A stretch of DNA of 64,000 bases, from the IMG/VR virus record IMGVR_UViG_3300036766_000194, positions 186,001 to 250,000 of that record; one strand, written 5' to 3'. Positions 15,611 to 56,055 of this stretch are shown in pieces. The notes beneath the pieces were generated by a model, which did not search any database, was not told where the DNA came from, and worked only from the letters and a program-made list of their open reading frames with translations. The translations under genes were made by a program, and so were the position numbers. The first letter of the stretch is position 1. Every line of letters starts with the position of its first letter.

Positions 15611-16216
15611 ATGTCCTTAGTGTATCTAATACATTGCACGCTTTCTAAAAAACCTTATATTGGGCAAACTATTCAATCTCTAAAAGATAGGTGGAAAGGG
15701 CACTGCTCCGATGCCCGAGCAGGGTCAAAAACTCATTTAGCTAATGCTATTCGCAAGTATGGAGCAAATGCATTTGAATTGTCCGTAGTATGTGAGGGTG
15801 AATTCACACAGCAAGAATTAGATAATCTAGAAAAACTCTGGATCATAGTGTTAAATGCACATGAAACGGTGGGAGGATATAATCAAACTTGGGGAGGAAC
15901 TAGTAATGCAGGATATTGGCATAGGGGCAAAAAGCGTTCTCCAAAAACCTGTGAAAAAATCAGAAAAGCTAAATTAGGAAACAAAAATCCGATGTTTGGG
16001 AAAAAGAATCCAAAAGGCTCTTTTTCAGCAACTAATAATCCTATGAAAGGAAAACGTAAATCTAAGGCATGGAAACAAAAAGTAAGCAAAATCATGTCAC
16101 ATCCAAGAACTCTTGAACATTACCAGGCTGTTCTATTAGGTAGAAGATCAAAAGGTCAGCACATCAAAAAAGAAGTTTGTAAAAAATATCAAATTTCTTA
16201 TCTAGACAAATACTAA
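15611..16216 (+). CDS. GIY-YIG homing endonuclease with NUMOD3, antisense to the head operon
   Basis: LVYLIHCTLSKKPYIGQT...RWKGH; GYNQTWGG; SPKTCEKI; NPMFGK. Confidence 0.9.
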   Translation: MSLVYLIHCTLSKKPYIGQTIQSLKDRWKGHCSDARAGSKTHLANAIRKYGANAFELSVVCEGEFTQQELDNLEKLWIIVLNAHETVGGYNQTWGGTSNAGYWHRGKKRSPKTCEKIRKAKLGNKNPMFGKKNPKGSFSATNNPMKGKRKSKAWKQKVSKIMSHPRTLEHYQAVLLGRRSKGQHIKKEVCKKYQISYLDKY

Positions 16217-16259
16217 CTTTTCTCCAATCCCTACAGTAGAGTATAATTGGAGGAACGTC

Positions 16260-16523
16260 ATGCCAACCGGATGCAAATGTGGTGAAAATAAAACTGCTGA
16301 TGTTGGAACTCTTTGGTATGTAGAAGGAAGAAACGCTTATTCAGCCGACGCTTCAGATCTTCAACACTCTGGAGAACGAGGAAAGAAATGCCCTGGATGT
16401 AACGGACCCATGCCACCAGTACGGCTGAACTTTCTTCCAAGATCTCAAGGGGGAGAAAACATAACCCACTGGATAGGTCGATGTCTTAACTGTAAAGCCA
16501 ATATAACTATTTGGAATGACTAA
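16260..16523 (+). CDS. Zn-ribbon protein; copy of the C-terminal domain of 55090..56055
   Basis: Identical to the C-terminus of 55090..56055 from GCKCGENKTA onward; own SD (GGAGG) and promoter-like CAGTAGAGTATAAT. Confidence 0.75.
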   Translation: MPTGCKCGENKTADVGTLWYVEGRNAYSADASDLQHSGERGKKCPGCNGPMPPVRLNFLPRSQGGENITHWIGRCLNCKANITIWND

Positions 16524-16525
16524 AA
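16269..16525 (+). repeat. 257-bp inverted repeat, copy A (partner 55088..55344)
   Basis: Compared base by base with the reverse complement of 55088..55344; no mismatch found. Confidence 0.95.
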
Positions 16526-40308: not shown

Positions 40309-40495
40309 ATGTTTTCTCCATATAACTTTTCAAACGAAGATGAACCGTCTGCTTTTCGTCCCATAAGGACGCTAATATCACATACAGGACCACGAGGACT
40401 CCTATGAATGATGGCAATGTCCACGCCCAATACTTGCCCTTTTCAATGCGCTCTGTTAGGTTCTGGATTCCTATCTCCTTAATCCACCGTTCCAA
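40292..40495 (-). CDS. Small membrane protein
   Basis: One TM segment. Confidence 0.5.
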   Translation of the reverse strand: MERWIKEIGIQNLTERIEKGKYWAWTLPSFIGVLVVLYVILASLWDEKQTVHLRLKSYMEKTYAHSV

Positions 40496-48340: not shown

Positions 48341-48694
48341 GAGTGGACAAACTCCAGGCTGATGTTAAGCCGCCGCTGCCATCGCAAAGGTGGCTGTTGG
48401 CTGCATAGCAGCGAACGGCAGAACCTTGGATGTCATACGGGCAACAGTGTTTTTGACACTTATTGTCTGCGACCCGAATATCGTTCGGATTGCACCTACG
48501 GCGCGTAAGCAATTTCGATTCAGTCGGATCGGCGACTCCAGATCAGGCCCATAGAAAAACTTGGTGGACCTGCGGGGATTCGAACCCCGGTACGAAACGA
48601 CAACCAAAACGCCTTCTTCCCTTACGGGTATTTACGAGCGTCAATGTCTCAGCAACCAGACCGGGTAACGAACTTCTGTCCGGCACCAGTCGCT
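48341..48694 (-). ncRNA. ssrA: Two-piece (circularly permuted) tmRNA gene
   Basis: Minus strand order: T arm CGGGG-TTCGAAT-CCCCG, CAGGTCC-A-CCA (CCA end at 48562), 11-nt spacer, then GGGCCTGATCTGGAGTCG (starts 48550). The acceptor stem has G3-U70 and A73. A frame ending ...TFAMAAAA-TAA follows. Outer limits approximate. Confidence 0.9.
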
Positions 48695-48749: not shown

Positions 48750-48974
48750 CTATCGCCCAATCTTTTCTATTTTTGTTAGAAAAATAGAATTTAGAGCTTC
48801 ATTAACTGCCTTCATCTGTTCAATTCCCTGTTGGCAAGCATCTAGGCTCTCTTTACTTATGTTGAAGATGCCGAGGCTGCCATTGTCAAGTTCCATTTCT
48901 TGAATGATGGCTTTGGCAATTTCACGGGGATTAGGTGAAACGTTTAATTCCGTTGTCCGCAACAAACTGGGCAT
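48750..48974 (-). CDS. Hypothetical protein
   Basis: ORF track; overlaps the upstream gene end. Confidence 0.5.
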   Translation of the reverse strand: MPSLLRTTELNVSPNPREIAKAIIQEMELDNGSLGIFNISKESLDACQQGIEQMKAVNEALNSIFLTKIEKIGR

Positions 48975-49911
48975 GATCAGCGGGAGGGAGTTCCCACGGG
49001 AGCGTCTTTACTCCCGGATAATAATAATTATCTGTTGGTCCATACATATCCAGAGTATAAGCGCCCCGTTGATTAAGAAGTTCCTTACCGATTTCGGTCA
49101 ACAGCCAGGGAGAGTTCACTCCGTCTTTCTTTTCAATGACACCCTCACGACGCATGTGGGTAAGAAGAGAAGAATCGTGTAAGGAGGGAAAATACGCCTT
49201 GAGTTCTTTGCTTATACAACCATCCGGGCGCGTGGCAATGGCTTGGAGAATTCCGTGACCTTGACTGCCAGCACGATACAACTTGGAAACGGTCCTGTTA
49301 CGGGGTGTAGAAAATTCCTGAGTCGTGTGGTCCAGCTTTTTGAAGAAATTCATATTTTGGACATCGTCCATGTCATTATAACTTGTAAACTGGTGGCGGA
49401 TATTCTCAAGCTCGGAGTGAGTATCGGAGAAGTTGGCATAACCATTAGCGAAGCTACCCCCGATCATGTTGAGTTTATTGGAAATGGAATTCTTGTCCTT
49501 AACCCTGTTCAACTGAAGAACTTCTTTTCCCAGTTGTGTCAGCTGCATACCCAAGTCATATCTGCGCTTTTGTTCCAGAGTTTGGATATTCGGCATTGCG
49601 CGTTTCCTCCGTTTGTATTCTACTGGATTAGACGCTAAACGGCTATTTCCCATATGCTCTATAGGTTTAGCCTGACCACTTACATAGATTTTAAGTGATT
49701 CTGAATCGGATCCTTCGGCTAAAATTCTACGCAAGTTACTAAGGAATTGCCAACTTCCGTCAGGATACACAAACATCTTACCTGTATCTCCCTGCTTACG
49801 CCACATAGAAAATTCATCAGGGCTTGCTATTCTATCCCATCCGTGTTCCATCAACAGGATATCAGCATCCCTGTCCATAGCTCCTTTGTGTAAAAACCAA
49901 GCCTTAGCCAT
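48931..49911 (-). CDS. Mosaic protein starting with leader MAKAWFLHKGA
   Basis: Three modules separated by RLAS, KRA and YRA motifs; last module winged-HTH-like. Confidence 0.8.
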   Translation of the reverse strand: MAKAWFLHKGAMDRDADILLMEHGWDRIASPDEFSMWRKQGDTGKMFVYPDGSWQFLSNLRRILAEGSDSESLKIYVSGQAKPIEHMGNSRLASNPVEYKRRKRAMPNIQTLEQKRRYDLGMQLTQLGKEVLQLNRVKDKNSISNKLNMIGGSFANGYANFSDTHSELENIRHQFTSYNDMDDVQNMNFFKKLDHTTQEFSTPRNRTVSKLYRAGSQGHGILQAIATRPDGCISKELKAYFPSLHDSSLLTHMRREGVIEKKDGVNSPWLLTEIGKELLNQRGAYTLDMYGPTDNYYYPGVKTLPWELPPADHAQFVADNGIKRFT

Positions 49912-49958
49912 TATTGACCTCTATAGTGGAGTGGAAATTAACTCAACTGAGGAAGAAT
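49862..49958. repeat. 97-bp direct repeat, copy 1 (promoter motif + SD + first 17 codons)
   Basis: Identical to 50491..50587 (offset 629). Confidence 0.95.
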
Positions 49959-49973
49959 GATTTGTAGTCCAAC

Positions 49974-50237
49974 TTACGAAATCCCGTTTCTAGAATTTCG
50001 TAATCCCAAGTAACTAATAATATCACCATTCACCAAGCTCCGTGTATAAGGAGCAAGTTGAACTTCGTTCTGACCGTATTCCCAAACCAAATGGAGAATT
50101 CGAGAGTCAAACTCATCATGATCACGACTCTGAATCCCACGAAGAAGTTCGACATCCTTATCTGGAATTTCGACTATGCGAAAGTAGTTCAAACTATCCC
50201 CTTGATACATTCCTCGAAGTTCAACTGGAATTCTCAT
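49974..50237 (-). CDS. Hypothetical protein
   Basis: AAGGAG SD. Confidence 0.7.
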   Translation of the reverse strand: MRIPVELRGMYQGDSLNYFRIVEIPDKDVELLRGIQSRDHDEFDSRILHLVWEYGQNEVQLAPYTRSLVNGDIISYLGLRNSRNGIS

Positions 50238-50248
50238 TCAAAGTCTCC

Positions 50249-50374
50249 TTGATAAGGAGTCGCAGCACGTTCATCAAGAATTCGTCGGTACGCCAAATTC
50301 CAATCAGTATGCTTGATAAGGCCTCGCAGCATTTTCATCAAGAATTCGTCGGTACGCCAAATTCCAATCAGTAT
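50249..50374. repeat. Tandem duplication with 64-bp period (41-bp perfect core)
   Basis: 50270..50310 = 50334..50374. Confidence 0.95.
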
Positions 50375-50540
50375 ACTGACCAAGTTCCTCGAAAGTAGTG
50401 ACGGAACCGTCATCACCGACCCAACGAGTCGGCATACGACCAACAGAAGCAGCAACATATCCGTCGTTGCGACGCCAGACATAATAAACGTCAGCATCCC
50501 TGTCCATAGCTCCTTTGTGTAAAAACCAAGCCTTAGCCAT
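50304..50540 (-). CDS. 78-aa protein with the same MAKAWFLHKGAMDRDAD leader
   Basis: Starts inside repeat copy 2; its stop is created by the 64-bp duplication. Confidence 0.7.
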   Translation of the reverse strand: MAKAWFLHKGAMDRDADVYYVWRRNDGYVAASVGRMPTRWVGDDGSVTTFEELGQYTDWNLAYRRILDENAARPYQAY

Positions 50541-50587
50541 TATTGACCTCTATAGTGGAGTGGAAATTAACTCAACTGAGGAAGAAT
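50491..50587. repeat. 97-bp direct repeat, copy 2
   Basis: Identical to 49862..49958. Confidence 0.95.
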
Positions 50588-50604
50588 TAAGTACTTATAC
50601 AATT

Positions 50605-51618
50605 ATGCAGATTCCTATTCCTCCTTCTGGAGTTATACCTAACCACATTTTTGAAACCTATTGGAATTTTGCCAGTGAGCGTCAACGTGTGTTTTGGAAA
50701 CGCAAGAATGGTGAACCAGGTCCTTGGAGTGAAGATCCTATTCTGCAAACCTATAAATTTACCAATACTTACCGGGTACTGGATAGAGTCAGCCAGTACC
50801 TATTGAGGAATATCATCGTCTATCCGGAGTGTAGCGATTTGGATTGTACAGTCCACTCTTCTCCTGAGAACACAATCTTCCGTATTATGTTCTTTAAGCT
50901 ATTCAATCGTCCAGAAACTTGGGAAATGCTCAGCAGTGAATTAGGCGAAGAACCCCATATAGATAATTTTAACTTTACCATCTACGATGAAACTCTTACA
51001 TCTGCTCAAGATCGTGGAGAGAAAATTTATTCCAACGCATACATGATGACAGCTGCGGGTAGTAACGGGGATCGTCGTCACCGGATGTATTTGCGATTGT
51101 ATGAAAAGATGTTTCATGAGGATAAAATCCAGGACAAGATTTTAGAAGCCACTTCACTAGAGGCTCTCTACAATCTTATCCGTACATATCGGACCATGGG
51201 ACCATTCCTCGCGATGCAGTACGCAATTGACCTCAATTATTCTCCGTTCGTAAATTTCTTAGAGACAGACTTCATCATAGCCGGACCGGGAGCTAGAAGA
51301 GGAATCCTAAAATGTTTTGATAGCATAGGAAACCACAATGAAGCTGATGTTATAAGATGGGTTCAAGAAACTCAAGATGAACAATTTATGTCGCGAGGGT
51401 TAGAATTTAAAAAGATAGGAAATCGTCCTCTACAGTTAATTGATTGCCAGTCGTTATTTTGTGAGGTGGATAAATTTACAAGAGCAAGTAACCCTGAAAT
51501 CCAGGTTGAGACAGGATCCGGGGATGCTCAAAAACGAGCAAGGATTAAACAGAACTTCAAGGAAAACAGTAATAAGATTGAGTATGTGTTTCCCTCCAAA
51601 TGGGGAGTTAAGATATGA
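50605..51618 (+). CDS. aGPT-Pplase1 family (alpha-glutamyl/putrescinyl thymine pyrophosphorylase clade 1; amino acid:DNA transferase-like)
   Basis: YWNFASERQRVF...GPWSEDPILQTYKFTNTYRVLDRVSQYL, FKLFNRPETW, GPFLAMQYAIDLNY, AGPGARRG, IDCQSLFCEVDK; start moved to ATG 50605. Confidence 0.85.
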   Translation: MQIPIPPSGVIPNHIFETYWNFASERQRVFWKRKNGEPGPWSEDPILQTYKFTNTYRVLDRVSQYLLRNIIVYPECSDLDCTVHSSPENTIFRIMFFKLFNRPETWEMLSSELGEEPHIDNFNFTIYDETLTSAQDRGEKIYSNAYMMTAAGSNGDRRHRMYLRLYEKMFHEDKIQDKILEATSLEALYNLIRTYRTMGPFLAMQYAIDLNYSPFVNFLETDFIIAGPGARRGILKCFDSIGNHNEADVIRWVQETQDEQFMSRGLEFKKIGNRPLQLIDCQSLFCEVDKFTRASNPEIQVETGSGDAQKRARIKQNFKENSNKIEYVFPSKWGVKI

Positions 51619-53574: not shown

Positions 53575-53814
53575 TTACTTGCTTAATTCAGCCTTCAAAG
53601 CATCGTGACTCTGGCCCTTATTAACTTTTCCATCAATAATGTGTTTCCAATTATCTCCCGGTCCAGTCCATACTTCTTCATTTCCTCTAGTGTAGTGATC
53701 CCATCCAGAAGGTTCAGCATGTTGGAATTCAAAACCTAAAGGAGTGAGCAACGCCATATCTTCATCACGATCGCGAGCATCAGCCCAACGGAATAAACGG
53801 GAAGTAAGTCTCAT
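53575..53814 (-). CDS. Small protein with leader MRLTSRLFRWA
   Basis: Start moved to ATG 53814 (AGAGG SD, promoter motif). Confidence 0.7.
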   Translation of the reverse strand: MRLTSRLFRWADARDRDEDMALLTPLGFEFQHAEPSGWDHYTRGNEEVWTGPGDNWKHIIDGKVNKGQSHDALKAELSK

Positions 53815-53972
53815 GGGTGCCTCTATAATGAAAGCGAAAAATTGGTGCCTGCAATAACGAATTTTCGAACGAATAGAGTATTCATAGATAGACGGACGCT
53901 CTGTTCGGCGCAACCCGTCAAATCACAAAAACCAAAAATATTCTTTTTGTTTTTCAGTCATAGTCTCACCTT

Positions 53973-54046
53973 TGGAACGCCCGACGAGACTTGTACCCGC
54001 AACCTTCCCTTTTGAAGAGGGCTGCTCTACATTGAGCTACGGGCGT
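53973..54046 (-). tRNA. tRNA with UCA anticodon (opal suppressor or Trp-like; atypical)
   Basis: 7-bp acceptor ACGCCCG/CGGGCGT, U73, CCA; loop CT-TCA-AA; short variable arm; T loop TACAAGT and a D loop with a single G are non-canonical. Confidence 0.7.
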
Positions 54047-55087: not shown

Positions 55088-55344
55088 TTTTAGTCATTCC
55101 AAATAGTTATATTGGCTTTACAGTTAAGACATCGACCTATCCAGTGGGTTATGTTTTCTCCCCCTTGAGATCTTGGAAGAAAGTTCAGCCGTACTGGTGG
55201 CATGGGTCCGTTACATCCAGGGCATTTCTTTCCTCGTTCTCCAGAGTGTTGAAGATCTGAAGCGTCGGCTGAATAAGCGTTTCTTCCTTCTACATACCAA
55301 AGAGTTCCAACATCAGCAGTTTTATTTTCACCACATTTGCATCC
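55088..55344 (-). repeat. 257-bp inverted repeat, copy B (partner 16269..16525)
   Basis: Exact reverse complement of 16269..16525. Confidence 0.95.
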
Positions 55345-56055
55345 TGGAGGACATTTGCAATTTGCGCCGCATTTGCAGTTGGGACCGCAATGACAGCTTG
55401 AACTGGCCTGAATCTTCTGTAGCAATCTACTTTTCCACTGTTGTTCCACGGGAAGTACTCCTGTCGGTTTACCCATCTGGTCATACACAATTACATATAA
55501 CGGTTTGGGTTGGGTTTTCAATTGTCTATTTCTATACATCTGGATGACCCGCTGAGCATCATTTATAGTCGGCTTGATCGGTATTGCTTTAGCAAACTCT
55601 ATTTTACGGACCTGTGGAGCACGTTGTATATATGTTGCCGAGGTTATCACCCGTTCTTGTGTCTCTTGAACAAACGTCTGGGGAAGTTTAAACAACCCCC
55701 TATAAGTTTGTAGAGTGGGATCGTGTCCTACGTCAGGTGTACTTGCCTGGGTTGAATTTTCCATAGACAAACCAGCAAAACAATTTAAAGCACGCGCATA
55801 AATGTCTGTGATAACATCTTTGTCATAGCGCAAACTAAGCATAAAAGTAGCGACTTCGTCAAGAAGAACTCCTAGAGCTTCTTGCGTAACCGTAACCATA
55901 TTCTTTGGTTCGTCCACAACAAGTGGGAATTTTAAGGAGAATCTTGTGAAGTTGGGTATTCCTAAATCTAATTCTATAACGACACAAGGGGTAGCATCAC
56001 GGATAATCGTGATTTCTAATTCTCCAGCAACAGGCGAAATGTAGGAAATCTTCAT
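55090..56055 (-). CDS. Mosaic protein with a metallothionein-like Cys cluster and a C-terminal Zn ribbon
   Basis: CHCGPNCKCGANCKCPPGCKCG; CPGCNG...CLNCK. Confidence 0.75.
   Translation of the reverse strand: MKISYISPVAGELEITIIRDATPCVVIELDLGIPNFTRFSLKFPLVVDEPKNMVTVTQEALGVLLDEVATFMLSLRYDKDVITDIYARALNCFAGLSMENSTQASTPDVGHDPTLQTYRGLFKLPQTFVQETQERVITSATYIQRAPQVRKIEFAKAIPIKPTINDAQRVIQMYRNRQLKTQPKPLYVIVYDQMGKPTGVLPVEQQWKSRLLQKIQASSSCHCGPNCKCGANCKCPPGCKCGENKTADVGTLWYVEGRNAYSADASDLQHSGERGKKCPGCNGPMPPVRLNFLPRSQGGENITHWIGRCLNCKANITIWND

What the first reader, a model, noticed from the sequence alone, without database searches (positions are those of the whole stretch)
49862..50587. Reusable promoter+leader cassette placed in front of different cargo
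Seen: an identical 97-bp unit (class-1 promoter motif, SD, MAKAWFLHKGAMDRDAD) starts two unrelated ORFs 629 bp apart. The 629-bp unit also holds an 87-aa gene and could excise or amplify by recombination between the repeats. Inference: leader duplication recruits new proteins into the proposed capsid-cargo pathway, much like a gene-cassette array.
Basis: partly seen in the sequence, partly recalled or inferred. Interest (0 to 1): 0.7.

Follow-up and report, generated by a model that had tools for sequence, protein, structure and literature searches.

The report
Duplicated gene start making a chimeric phage gene
In a 300-kb sediment phage, the ribosome-binding site and first 17 codons of one small conserved gene were recently copied in front of an unrelated gene fragment, making a chimeric ORF; this looks like ordinary genome scrambling in a fast-changing region, not a dedicated promoter or capsid-targeting cassette system.

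Summary
The exact 97-nt direct repeat is real (window 49862-49958 and 50491-50587, minus-strand genes). It has two copies in the whole 299,875-bp genome, about twice the flank depth, and the same layout in independent assemblies.

It carries 47 nt of 5' flank with a Shine-Dalgarno sequence, plus codons 1-17. It holds neither of the two promoter classes I could define in this genome.

The 'leader' MAKAWFLHKGAMDRDAD is the native N-terminus of a conserved ~90-aa protein family ('N90'). Relatives encode N90 as a stand-alone gene between a divergent gene and a winged-helix-like gene.

- In this phage N90 has lost its stop codon. It runs in frame through a canonical internal promoter into that downstream gene, giving the 326-aa ORF.
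- The 78-aa ORF is a chimera of the N90 leader and a body that is 99.6% identical over 249 nt to a 79-aa gene 143 kb away.
- The same 1.7 kb also holds a 64-nt tandem duplication. A sister strain carries a 399-bp in-frame deletion.
- A third exact in-frame partial-gene copy (257 nt) lies elsewhere in the window, beside a homing endonuclease gene.

Best reading: recent ectopic copy-and-paste in a hyperplastic region. I found no evidence for a cassette array or a capsid-cargo role, although packaging could not be tested.

The parts
49862..49958 (-). Repeat copy R1: 47 nt of 5' flank (SD GAGG) plus the first 50 coding nt of the 326-aa ORF. This is the native context next to the N90 body.
   Evidence: N-terminus homologous to P0016 and P0020 from residue 1
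50491..50587 (-). Repeat copy R2, 100% identical to R1. It heads the chimeric 78-aa ORF and ends 17 nt from the ATG of the divergent 5-hmdU DNA kinase gene.
   Evidence: unitig depth 64 against 34 in the flanks
50304..50540 (-). A78: chimeric 78-aa ORF made of the 17-aa N90 leader plus a 61-aa body shared with the 79-aa gene at genome position 93 kb. Its stop is a TGA created by the 64-nt tandem duplication.
50261..50509 (-). 249-nt segment, 99.6% identical to genome 93086-93334 on the opposite strand. It overlaps R2 by 19 nt.
   Evidence: loose ends at 50261 and 50506 read into the 93-kb flanks
50242..50369 (-). 64-nt tandem duplication (2 units, 91% alike) at the junction of A and the 87-aa gene. 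Unit 2 keeps the old A C-terminus, the AAGGAG site and an ATGA stop/start overlap with the 87-aa gene.
   Evidence: depth of the shared unit about 4x
49974..50237 (-). B87: 87-aa ORFan with a strong SD. It is unique in the genome. The sister strain has an in-frame 3-nt deletion in it.
49642..49911 (-). N90 module: residues 1-90 of the 326-aa ORF, homologous to stand-alone 90-92-aa proteins. The model has a five-strand sheet plus helix; residues 1-12 form a low-confidence N-terminal helix.
49594..49647 (-). Canonical internal promoter (31.7 bits, rank 5 in the genome), SD GGAGGAA and the ATG of Met106. It is translated in frame as a disordered linker because the N90 stop codon is missing.
48931..49596 (-). 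C221 module: helical plus winged-helix-like domain. Homologues (P0010, P0002, P0011-15) begin at the position equivalent to Met106.
50605..51618 (+). Divergent neighbour, a 5-hmdU DNA kinase (PF18723). The 10-nt palindrome TAAGTACTTA (50588-50597) lies between it and R2.

Best explanation
The repeat is the scar of a recent ectopic partial-gene duplication in a hyperplastic region of a jumbo phage.

**Ancestral layout (inferred).** Two distant relatives suggest the order: divergent gene <-|-> N90 (~90 aa) -> promoter -> winged-helix-like gene C.

**What is seen in this lineage**
- A 532-nt stretch now lies between two identical copies of the N90 start module (47-nt 5' flank, SD and codons 1-17). 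The stretch holds the body of a small ORFan 'A' and the translationally coupled ORFan B87.
- A is therefore translated as a chimera, leader plus A body, which is the 78-aa ORF.
- N90 has lost its stop codon and reads in frame through gene C's own promoter and SD, giving the 326-aa fusion. Gene C can presumably still be expressed alone from that internal promoter.

**Proposed order of events (inferred)**
1. The A-B87 operon existed.
2. A 64-nt tandem duplication arose at the A/B87 junction.
3. The 97-98-nt N90 start module was duplicated, creating the chimera.
4. A 249-nt piece of the chimera, including 19 nt of the leader, was copied in frame into a gene at 93 kb. That gene has its own canonical promoter and lies near an Endonuclease VII-type ORF.

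**Mechanism (inferred).** Illegitimate recombination or template switching during break repair, in a phage that has its own RecA/UvsX-like recombinase.

**What the repeat does.** It supplies translation start signals, not a recognisable promoter. The flanking repeats could in principle loop out the 629-bp unit, but no copy-number change is visible.
For: - The repeat is exact, has only two copies, and its unitig is at about 2x flank depth while B87 is at 1x.
- The same layout occurs in independent assemblies, each with strain-specific changes.
- The leader is native to N90. P0016 (92 aa, 51% identity) and P0020 (90 aa) align from residue 1, starting MSKALFLRKGAMD.. and MGNAKLLKKYALVD...
- In both relatives N90 sits directly beside a divergent gene and upstream of a C homologue, with no A or B genes between.
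- C homologues start at the position equivalent to Met106, and a 31.7-bit canonical promoter plus SD lies just upstream of it inside the ORF.
- In L008 the N90 stop codon is the TAG of that promoter's upstream box.
- The A body is 99.6% identical over 249 nt to the 93-kb gene, which has its own 19-bit promoter and a different N-terminus.
- The A body is not detectably related to N90.
- Unit 1 of the tandem duplication at both loci ends with the same CCTTATCAAG as the window locus's unit 2. At the window locus, unit 2 runs straight into the B87 SD and ATGA overlap, so the duplication arose there.
- A third exact partial copy of 257 nt makes an 87-aa ORF behind a canonical promoter, next to a GIY-YIG homing endonuclease. 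This shows the process is general in this genome.
- A RecA-like gene is present.
Against: - The order of events is inferred, not shown. No genome lacking the 629-bp unit was found, and the two relatives with the 'ancestral' synteny are distant (38-51% amino-acid identity).
- The alternative direction cannot be excluded: the 93-kb gene as donor, with the chimera formed by a crossover in the 19-20 nt shared stretch.
- Perfect identity of both patches could also reflect continuing gene conversion rather than recency.
- The promoter that drives the minus-strand genes was not identified, so the repeat may hold a promoter of a class I could not recognise.
- The N-terminal 12 residues are conserved yet modelled as a detached helix with low pLDDT. 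That would also fit a functional tag.
Confidence: 0.72

Rival explanations
1. The 17-residue leader is a portable capsid-targeting or processing signal, comparable to the T4 capsid targeting sequence. Its duplication recruits a new protein into the virion, with the unit behaving like a gene cassette.
For: - The N-terminal ~13 residues are the best conserved stretch between the N90 homologues (10 of 13 identical to P0016).
- AlphaFold models residues 1-12 as a low-confidence helix not packed on the domain. This is compatible with a tag that binds a partner.
- The duplicated piece stops just after this segment.
Against: - Only two ORFs in the genome carry the leader.
- The leader has no Glu, so it has no T4-type (L/I)-x-E or phiKZ-type x-x-E cleavage site (motifs from my own knowledge). 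The nearest L-M-E in N90 lies outside the repeat and is absent from the chimera.
- No S77 or S78 prohead protease was detected (the S77 search had no working positive control).
- The locus sits among DNA-modification genes, tRNA genes and a tmRNA, not head genes.
- The fused partner looks like a winged-helix DNA binder.
- The chimera's body is also truncated by a frameshifting duplication.
Confidence: 0.06
2. A PeSL-like recombination module. The repeat is a regulatory and recombination site, and the 629-bp unit entered (and can leave) as a mini-circle by homologous recombination at the repeat, as shown for promoter-early stem-loops in T4-type phages.
For: - R-U-R is exactly the product of a single crossover between a circular R-U molecule and a genomic R.
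- The unit carries ORFans and sits in a variable region.
- 97 nt exceeds the <50 bp of homology quoted for T4-type recombination (PMC2839356).
- A RecA-like gene is present.
Against: - There are two copies only, against the many dispersed PeSLs of those phages.
- There is no terminator stem-loop (fold z-score +0.75) and no recognisable promoter.
- The repeat extends 50 nt into coding sequence.
- Both strains examined keep the unit at 1x depth.
- A circle would still need a first illegitimate event to create the leader-A junction.
Confidence: 0.12
3. An assembly artefact, or gene conversion between two old paralogues that share an N-terminal domain.
For: - De Bruijn assemblies can misplace short repeats.
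- MAFFT can line up a few residues between the A body and N90, such as W, DG and RRIL-E.
Against: - The repeat unitig is at 2x depth and the unit between the copies at 1x.
- Three assemblies from different samples agree.
- At 97 nt the repeat is shorter than typical read lengths.
- The A body scores -0.5 bits against the N90 profile, and 639 of 2000 shuffles do as well or better. Local alignment gives p = 0.4.
- The flanks on both sides of the repeat are non-homologous.
Confidence: 0.03

Closest known systems
Partial-gene (5'-end) duplication creating chimeric ORFs in hyperplastic or 'ORFanage' regions of large phages, that is, mosaicism by illegitimate recombination
   Same: - An exact short duplicated segment with non-homologous flanks.
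- The new ORF is built from the start of one gene and the body of another.
- It is clustered with indels, a tandem duplication and ORFans.
- It is variable between near-identical strains.
   Different: - Here three separate exact in-frame copies (97, 249 and 257 nt) coexist in one genome.
- Two of them lie within 1 kb of homing-endonuclease-type genes.
- One piece (MDRDAD) has been passed on twice.
PeSL mobile regulatory cassettes of T4-type phages (Arbiol et al. 2010, PMC2839356; Comeau et al. 2014, PMC4122927)
   Same: - Direct repeats carrying expression signals bracket an ORFan unit.
- Recombination between them could delete the unit or release a small circle.
- No dedicated integrase is involved.
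   Different: - No sigma-70-like early promoter above chance and no terminator stem-loop.
- Two copies instead of many.
- The repeat includes 17 codons.
- No deletion allele or circle was seen.
Integron gene-cassette arrays
   Same: Only the general idea of cargo placed behind a shared expression signal.
   Different: - No attC or attI sites and no IntI integrase.
- The cargo is not promoterless behind a common Pc.
- The fusion is translational.
T4 capsid targeting sequence (CTS) of the internal proteins (own knowledge: Mullaney and Black 1996)
   Same: A short N-terminal peptide shared by otherwise different proteins.
   Different: - No protease cleavage motif in the shared peptide.
- Only two carriers.
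- The peptide is the conserved N-terminus of a small globular protein family.
- No T4-type prohead protease was detected.

Membership tests
Segmental partial-gene duplication giving a chimeric gene | Exact or near-exact repeated segment with non-homologous sequence on both sides | tested here: met
   97/97 identical and the flanks are unrelated
Segmental partial-gene duplication giving a chimeric gene | A parental gene can be identified, in which the duplicated part is native | tested here: met
   N90 homologues P0016 and P0020 share the N-terminus from residue 1
Segmental partial-gene duplication giving a chimeric gene | Copy number of the segment is twice that of the flanks in sequencing data | tested here: met
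   Unitig depth 64.1 against 34-36.6 in X1, and 29 against 11-11.8 in X2
Segmental partial-gene duplication giving a chimeric gene | An ancestral allele without the duplication exists in close relatives | tested here: inconclusive
   Only distant relatives show the simple layout. Every near-identical strain found carries the duplication.
PeSL mobile regulatory cassette | Strong sigma-70-like early promoter in the repeat | tested here: not met
   Only a 9/12 match whose -10 box overlaps the ATG, and the count of sigma-70-like sites (3) is not above shuffles (mean 3.6). No match to the phage's own promoter classes.
PeSL mobile regulatory cassette | Stem-loop terminator in the repeat | tested here: not met
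   Fold energy -11.3 kcal/mol, z = +0.75 against shuffles. No terminator-like site in the repeat and 0 inverted repeats.
PeSL mobile regulatory cassette | Many dispersed copies in hyperplastic regions | tested here: not met
   Two copies in 299,875 bp
PeSL mobile regulatory cassette | Mini-circles or deletion alleles produced by recombination between copies | not testable with these tools
   Only Logan contigs with k=31 were available. Junctions inside a 97-nt repeat cannot be resolved, and depth shows no loss of the unit.
Integron cassette array | attC recombination sites and an adjacent IntI integrase | tested here: not met
   No inverted repeats. Neighbouring ORFs give no integrase hit in Pfam or PHROGs.
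T4-type capsid targeting sequence | The leader ends at a prohead-protease site, (L/I)-x-E | tested here: not met
   The leader MAKAWFLHKGAMDRDAD has no Glu. The motif itself is from my own knowledge.
T4-type capsid targeting sequence | Shared by several virion-internal proteins | tested here: not met
   Only two ORFs carry it
T4-type capsid targeting sequence | Products found in virions with the leader removed | not testable with these tools
   No proteomic data are available

The most novel reading that the evidence does not exclude
The conserved, structurally detached N-terminal helix of the N90 family is a portable interaction or targeting tag, and this phage is re-using it. The same phage places exact gene fragments in frame behind existing start regions three times (97, 249 and 257 nt), twice beside homing-endonuclease genes. 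This would point to an endonuclease-driven route by which jumbo phages make new small proteins from pieces of old ones.
Probability: 0.1. Interest if true: 0.65.

Novelty: new member of a known kind. Interest (0 to 1): 0.3.

Why it matters
This is a clean, datable snapshot of how new small ORFs arise in a large phage. A start module is copied onto another gene's body, a stop codon is lost so that two genes fuse across a live promoter, and fragments are copied between distant loci, all within about 1.7 kb and all still at or near 100% identity. It also warns annotators that a shared N-terminus need not mean a shared signal peptide. It does not reveal a new cassette or cargo system.

Tried and rejected
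- **T7-like promoter.** The flank CCACTATAGAGG resembles a T7-type promoter, but the motif occurs only in the two repeat copies, so it is not a promoter class of this genome.
- **Recurring motif in the 5' flank.** I searched every 12-mer of the 47-nt flank with up to 1 mismatch in the genome and found nothing recurrent.
- **A body as a diverged N90 paralogue.** Local alignment gave p = 0.4, and the profile score was -0.5 bits with 639 of 2000 shuffles as good. A weak N90-like pattern in the 112-aa ORF 53575-53913 (p = 0.003) was not picked up by jackhmmer.
- **Family libraries.** Pfam, PHROGs, NCBIfam and PADLOC gave nothing for A78, B87, N90 or C221.
- **Atlas look-alikes.** The results for N90 and B87 were uninformative.
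- **Fold searches on the 326-aa model.** Only weak MarR and winged-helix hits appeared (best E = 0.17), and nothing matched N90.
- **AlphaFold model of A78.** It was unreliable, with mean pLDDT 45.
- **Closer relatives.** Searches of IMG/VR with the proteins or with DNA found none. The 5-hmdU kinase relatives L004 and L005 lie in a different context.
- **Degenerate leader scan of JGI metagenomes.** It returned only the sister-strain contig.
- **The 93-kb locus before the 249-nt copy arrived.** The zinc-ribbon ORF downstream had no homologue. Run X2 gave no contigs on the 93-kb flanks, which is not proof of absence.
- **Stop-codon recoding.** A tRNA with anticodon UCA is present, but TGA ends 104 of 360 ORFs. 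Read-through of A78 would add only 9 residues.

Full report
**Setting.** The window is bases 186001-250000 of a 299,875-bp IMG/VR virus record with terminal repeats, that is, a jumbo phage. It comes from sediment metagenomes. Around the finding lie a tRNA cluster, a permuted tmRNA, a 5-hmdU DNA kinase gene, an SLT transglycosylase and baseplate genes. The genes of the finding are on the minus strand.

**The observation.** The repeat finder reports two 100% identical 97-nt copies at 49862-49958 and 50491-50587, 629 nt apart. Neither half of the unit has any other match in the window with up to 3 mismatches, and shuffles expect none. The whole genome holds exactly these two copies.

Read on the minus strand, each copy has 47 nt of 5' flank ending in GAGG-N6-ATG, followed by 50 coding nt. 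The copies start a 78-aa ORF (A78, 50540..50304) and a 326-aa ORF (C326, 49911..48931). An 87-aa ORF (B87, 50237..49974) with an AAGGAG site lies between them.

**Is the structure real?** Logan contigs of four sediment runs were laid on the region.
- In X1 the flanks have k-mer depth 34-34.5, the B87 unitig 36.6 and the 97-nt repeat unitig 64.1. That means two copies of the repeat and one of the unit between them.
- X2 shows the same pattern: 11-11.8 for flanks and B87, against 29 for the repeat.
- A 3,973-bp JGI contig from another sample (L006) is 99.7% identical and has the same layout. It also has its own differences: a 98-nt repeat, a 3-nt in-frame deletion in B87 and a 399-bp in-frame deletion in C326.
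- A 26-kb ENA contig shows the same gene order.

An assembly artefact is therefore excluded for practical purposes. No excess or deficit of the 629-bp unit is visible.

**Promoter claim.** K-mer enrichment upstream of ORFs reveals two motif classes.
- Class 1 is TAACCTTTTT-N12-GTAGAATA, often followed by GGAGGAAC and the start codon.
- Class 2 is AGTATTAA.

A weight matrix built from 29 class-1 sites gives more than 15 bits to about 43 positions in the genome. The repeat scores 0.7 bits on the plus strand and about -6 bits on the minus strand. AGTATTAA is absent from the repeat. The sigma-70 scan finds only a 9/12 match whose -10 box overlaps the ATG, and the number of such sites is not above shuffles. 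The 5' flank does not fold better than shuffles.

So the repeat carries translation signals, but no promoter that I can recognise. A 10-nt palindrome, TAAGTACTTA, sits just outside R2 next to the kinase ATG. It might serve both directions, but this is speculation.

**What the 326-aa ORF is.** An exhaustive HMMER search splits it into two modules.
- Residues 1-88 match stand-alone proteins P0016 (92 aa, 51% identity) and P0020 (90 aa). The match starts at residue 1: MSKALFLRKGAMD.. and MGNAKLLKKYALVD.. against MAKAWFLHKGAMD...
- Residues ~106-326 match 220-280-aa proteins such as P0010, P0002 and P0011-15. These begin at the position equivalent to Met106: MPTVQELESKR.. against MPNIQTLEQKRR...

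On the relatives' contigs the order is divergent gene, N90, short spacer, C homologue. In L008 the N90 stop codon is the TAG of a class-1 promoter box that precedes the C homologue.

In this phage the same promoter is present inside the ORF, together with GGAGGAA and the ATG of Met106. It scores 31.7 bits, rank 5 in the genome. The N90 frame misses the TAG and runs through. AlphaFold models residues 81-101 as disordered. It also models N90 as a five-strand sheet plus helix, and the C part as a confident helical and winged-helix-like domain with weak MarR-type fold hits. C326 is thus an N90-C fusion, and C can probably still be made alone. This last step is inferred.

**What the 78-aa ORF is.** The stretch 50261-50509 is 99.6% identical to genome 93086-93334 on the other strand. 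A 79-aa gene lies there with its own class-1 promoter (19.1 bits), a GAGGAG site, a GTG start and a different N-terminus, VKTPLPVQVGTT. It then continues with [L/M]DRDADVYYVW....

This segment overlaps R2 by 19 nt. A78 is therefore covered almost end to end by two patches identical to other loci. Past the leader, the A body is not detectably related to N90.

**Tandem duplication.** A 64-nt tandem duplication (units 91% alike) sits at the end of A.
- At the window locus, unit 2 runs directly into the B87 ribosome site.
- In the pre-duplication frame, A would end with an ATGA overlap onto the B87 start. That is the signature of an old, coupled A-B87 operon.
- At 93 kb, unit 1 has the window-type ending, but unit 2 breaks off into small indels and unrelated sequence.

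**Direction of events.**
- The leader is native to N90. DRDAD aligns with DNIID of P0016.
- The A body is natively coupled to B87 at the window locus.
- The 93-kb copy contains 19 nt of N90-derived leader.

The simplest order is: A-B87 operon; then the tandem duplication; then duplication of the N90 start module, which creates the chimera; then a copy of 249 nt into the 93-kb gene. This order needs no chance 19-nt homology. The reverse direction, with the 93-kb gene as donor and a crossover in the shared 19-20 nt, is not excluded. No allele lacking either patch was found.

**A general habit of this genome.** A self-comparison shows another exact dispersed copy: window 16269-16525 equals 55088-55344 (257 nt, 100%). 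It makes an 87-aa ORF of three new codons plus the last 85 residues of a 321-aa protein encoded next to baseplate genes. This ORF sits behind a 27-bit class-1 promoter and immediately after a GIY-YIG homing endonuclease gene.

The 93-kb copy lies about 650 nt from an Endonuclease VII-type ORF. The phage has a RecA/UvsX-like gene. Break repair that uses ectopic templates is therefore a reasonable, though inferred, mechanism.

**The cargo idea.**
- Only two ORFs carry the leader.
- The leader has no Glu-type maturation site.
- No S77 or S78 prohead protease was detected, although the S77 search had no working positive control.
- The fused partner looks like a DNA binder.
- On the other side, residues 1-12 are conserved and modelled as a detached, low-confidence helix. 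A role as an interaction tag cannot be ruled out.

**Comparison with known systems.** The closest described system in function is the PeSL cassette of T4-type phages. There, direct repeats with expression signals bracket ORFans and produce deletions and mini-circles (PMC2839356). This repeat fails the defining PeSL features (promoter, stem-loop, many copies), so it is not a member. It could still undergo the same loop-out recombination. It shares nothing with integron cassettes beyond the metaphor.

**Verdict.** This is a real and well-preserved example of start-module duplication and chimeric ORF formation in a hyperplastic region. It is ordinary in kind and modest in interest.

Noticed in passing
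window 16269-16525 (+) and 55088-55344 (-): A second exact dispersed copy (257 nt, 100%). It makes an 87-aa ORF (16260-16523) of MPT plus the last 85 residues of the 321-aa ORF 55090-56055. The ORF sits behind a canonical promoter and SD (27 bits) and directly downstream of a GIY-YIG homing endonuclease ORF (15611-16216).
   Followed up: partly
L003 3052-3452 and 3982-4476 (genome 93052-94476): The 79-aa gene carrying the 249-nt copy has its own canonical promoter. A 7-nt and a 4-nt micro-duplication follow the copy. Downstream lie a 44-aa zinc-ribbon-like ORF and an Endonuclease VII (PF02945) ORF that overlaps the end of a peptide deformylase gene.
   Followed up: partly
window 49594-49647 (-): A top-ranked phage promoter plus SD lies inside the 326-aa ORF and is translated as a disordered linker. 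The stop codon of the upstream N90 gene has been lost, so two genes are fused across a promoter that is probably still active.
   Followed up: yes
window 49021-49419: A sister strain (L006, runs X2 and X3) has a 399-bp in-frame deletion that removes most of the winged-helix-like part of the C module. The gene therefore seems dispensable.
   Followed up: partly
window 48365-48626 (-): Permuted tmRNA (Rfam RF04321, 51.6 bits, gathering score 47), about 300 nt downstream of the 326-aa ORF. ARAGORN also calls it.
   Followed up: no
window 53973-54046 (-): A tRNA with anticodon UCA, which would read UGA. TGA is nevertheless the stop codon of 104 of 360 ORFs, so there is no genome-wide recoding.
   Followed up: partly
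whole genome, e.g. window 16212-16262, 49616-49647, 53529 region: The phage's main promoter class is TAACCTTTTT-N12-GTAGAATA. It lies either 5-7 nt before the ATG (leaderless-like) or is followed by a near-invariant TGGAGGAACG SD unit. This is the truly re-used promoter-plus-leader unit, with 30-40 sites. A second class is AGTATTAA.
   Followed up: partly
genome 60148-60277 / 100725-100854 and 40383-40472 / 124093-124182: Further dispersed repeats at 95-99% identity. The first pair lies inside two paralogous ORFs of about 1,400 aa.
   Followed up: no
window 50588-50597: A perfect 10-nt palindrome, TAAGTACTTA, lies exactly between repeat copy R2 and the ATG of the 5-hmdU DNA kinase gene. It is absent upstream of R1.
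   Followed up: no
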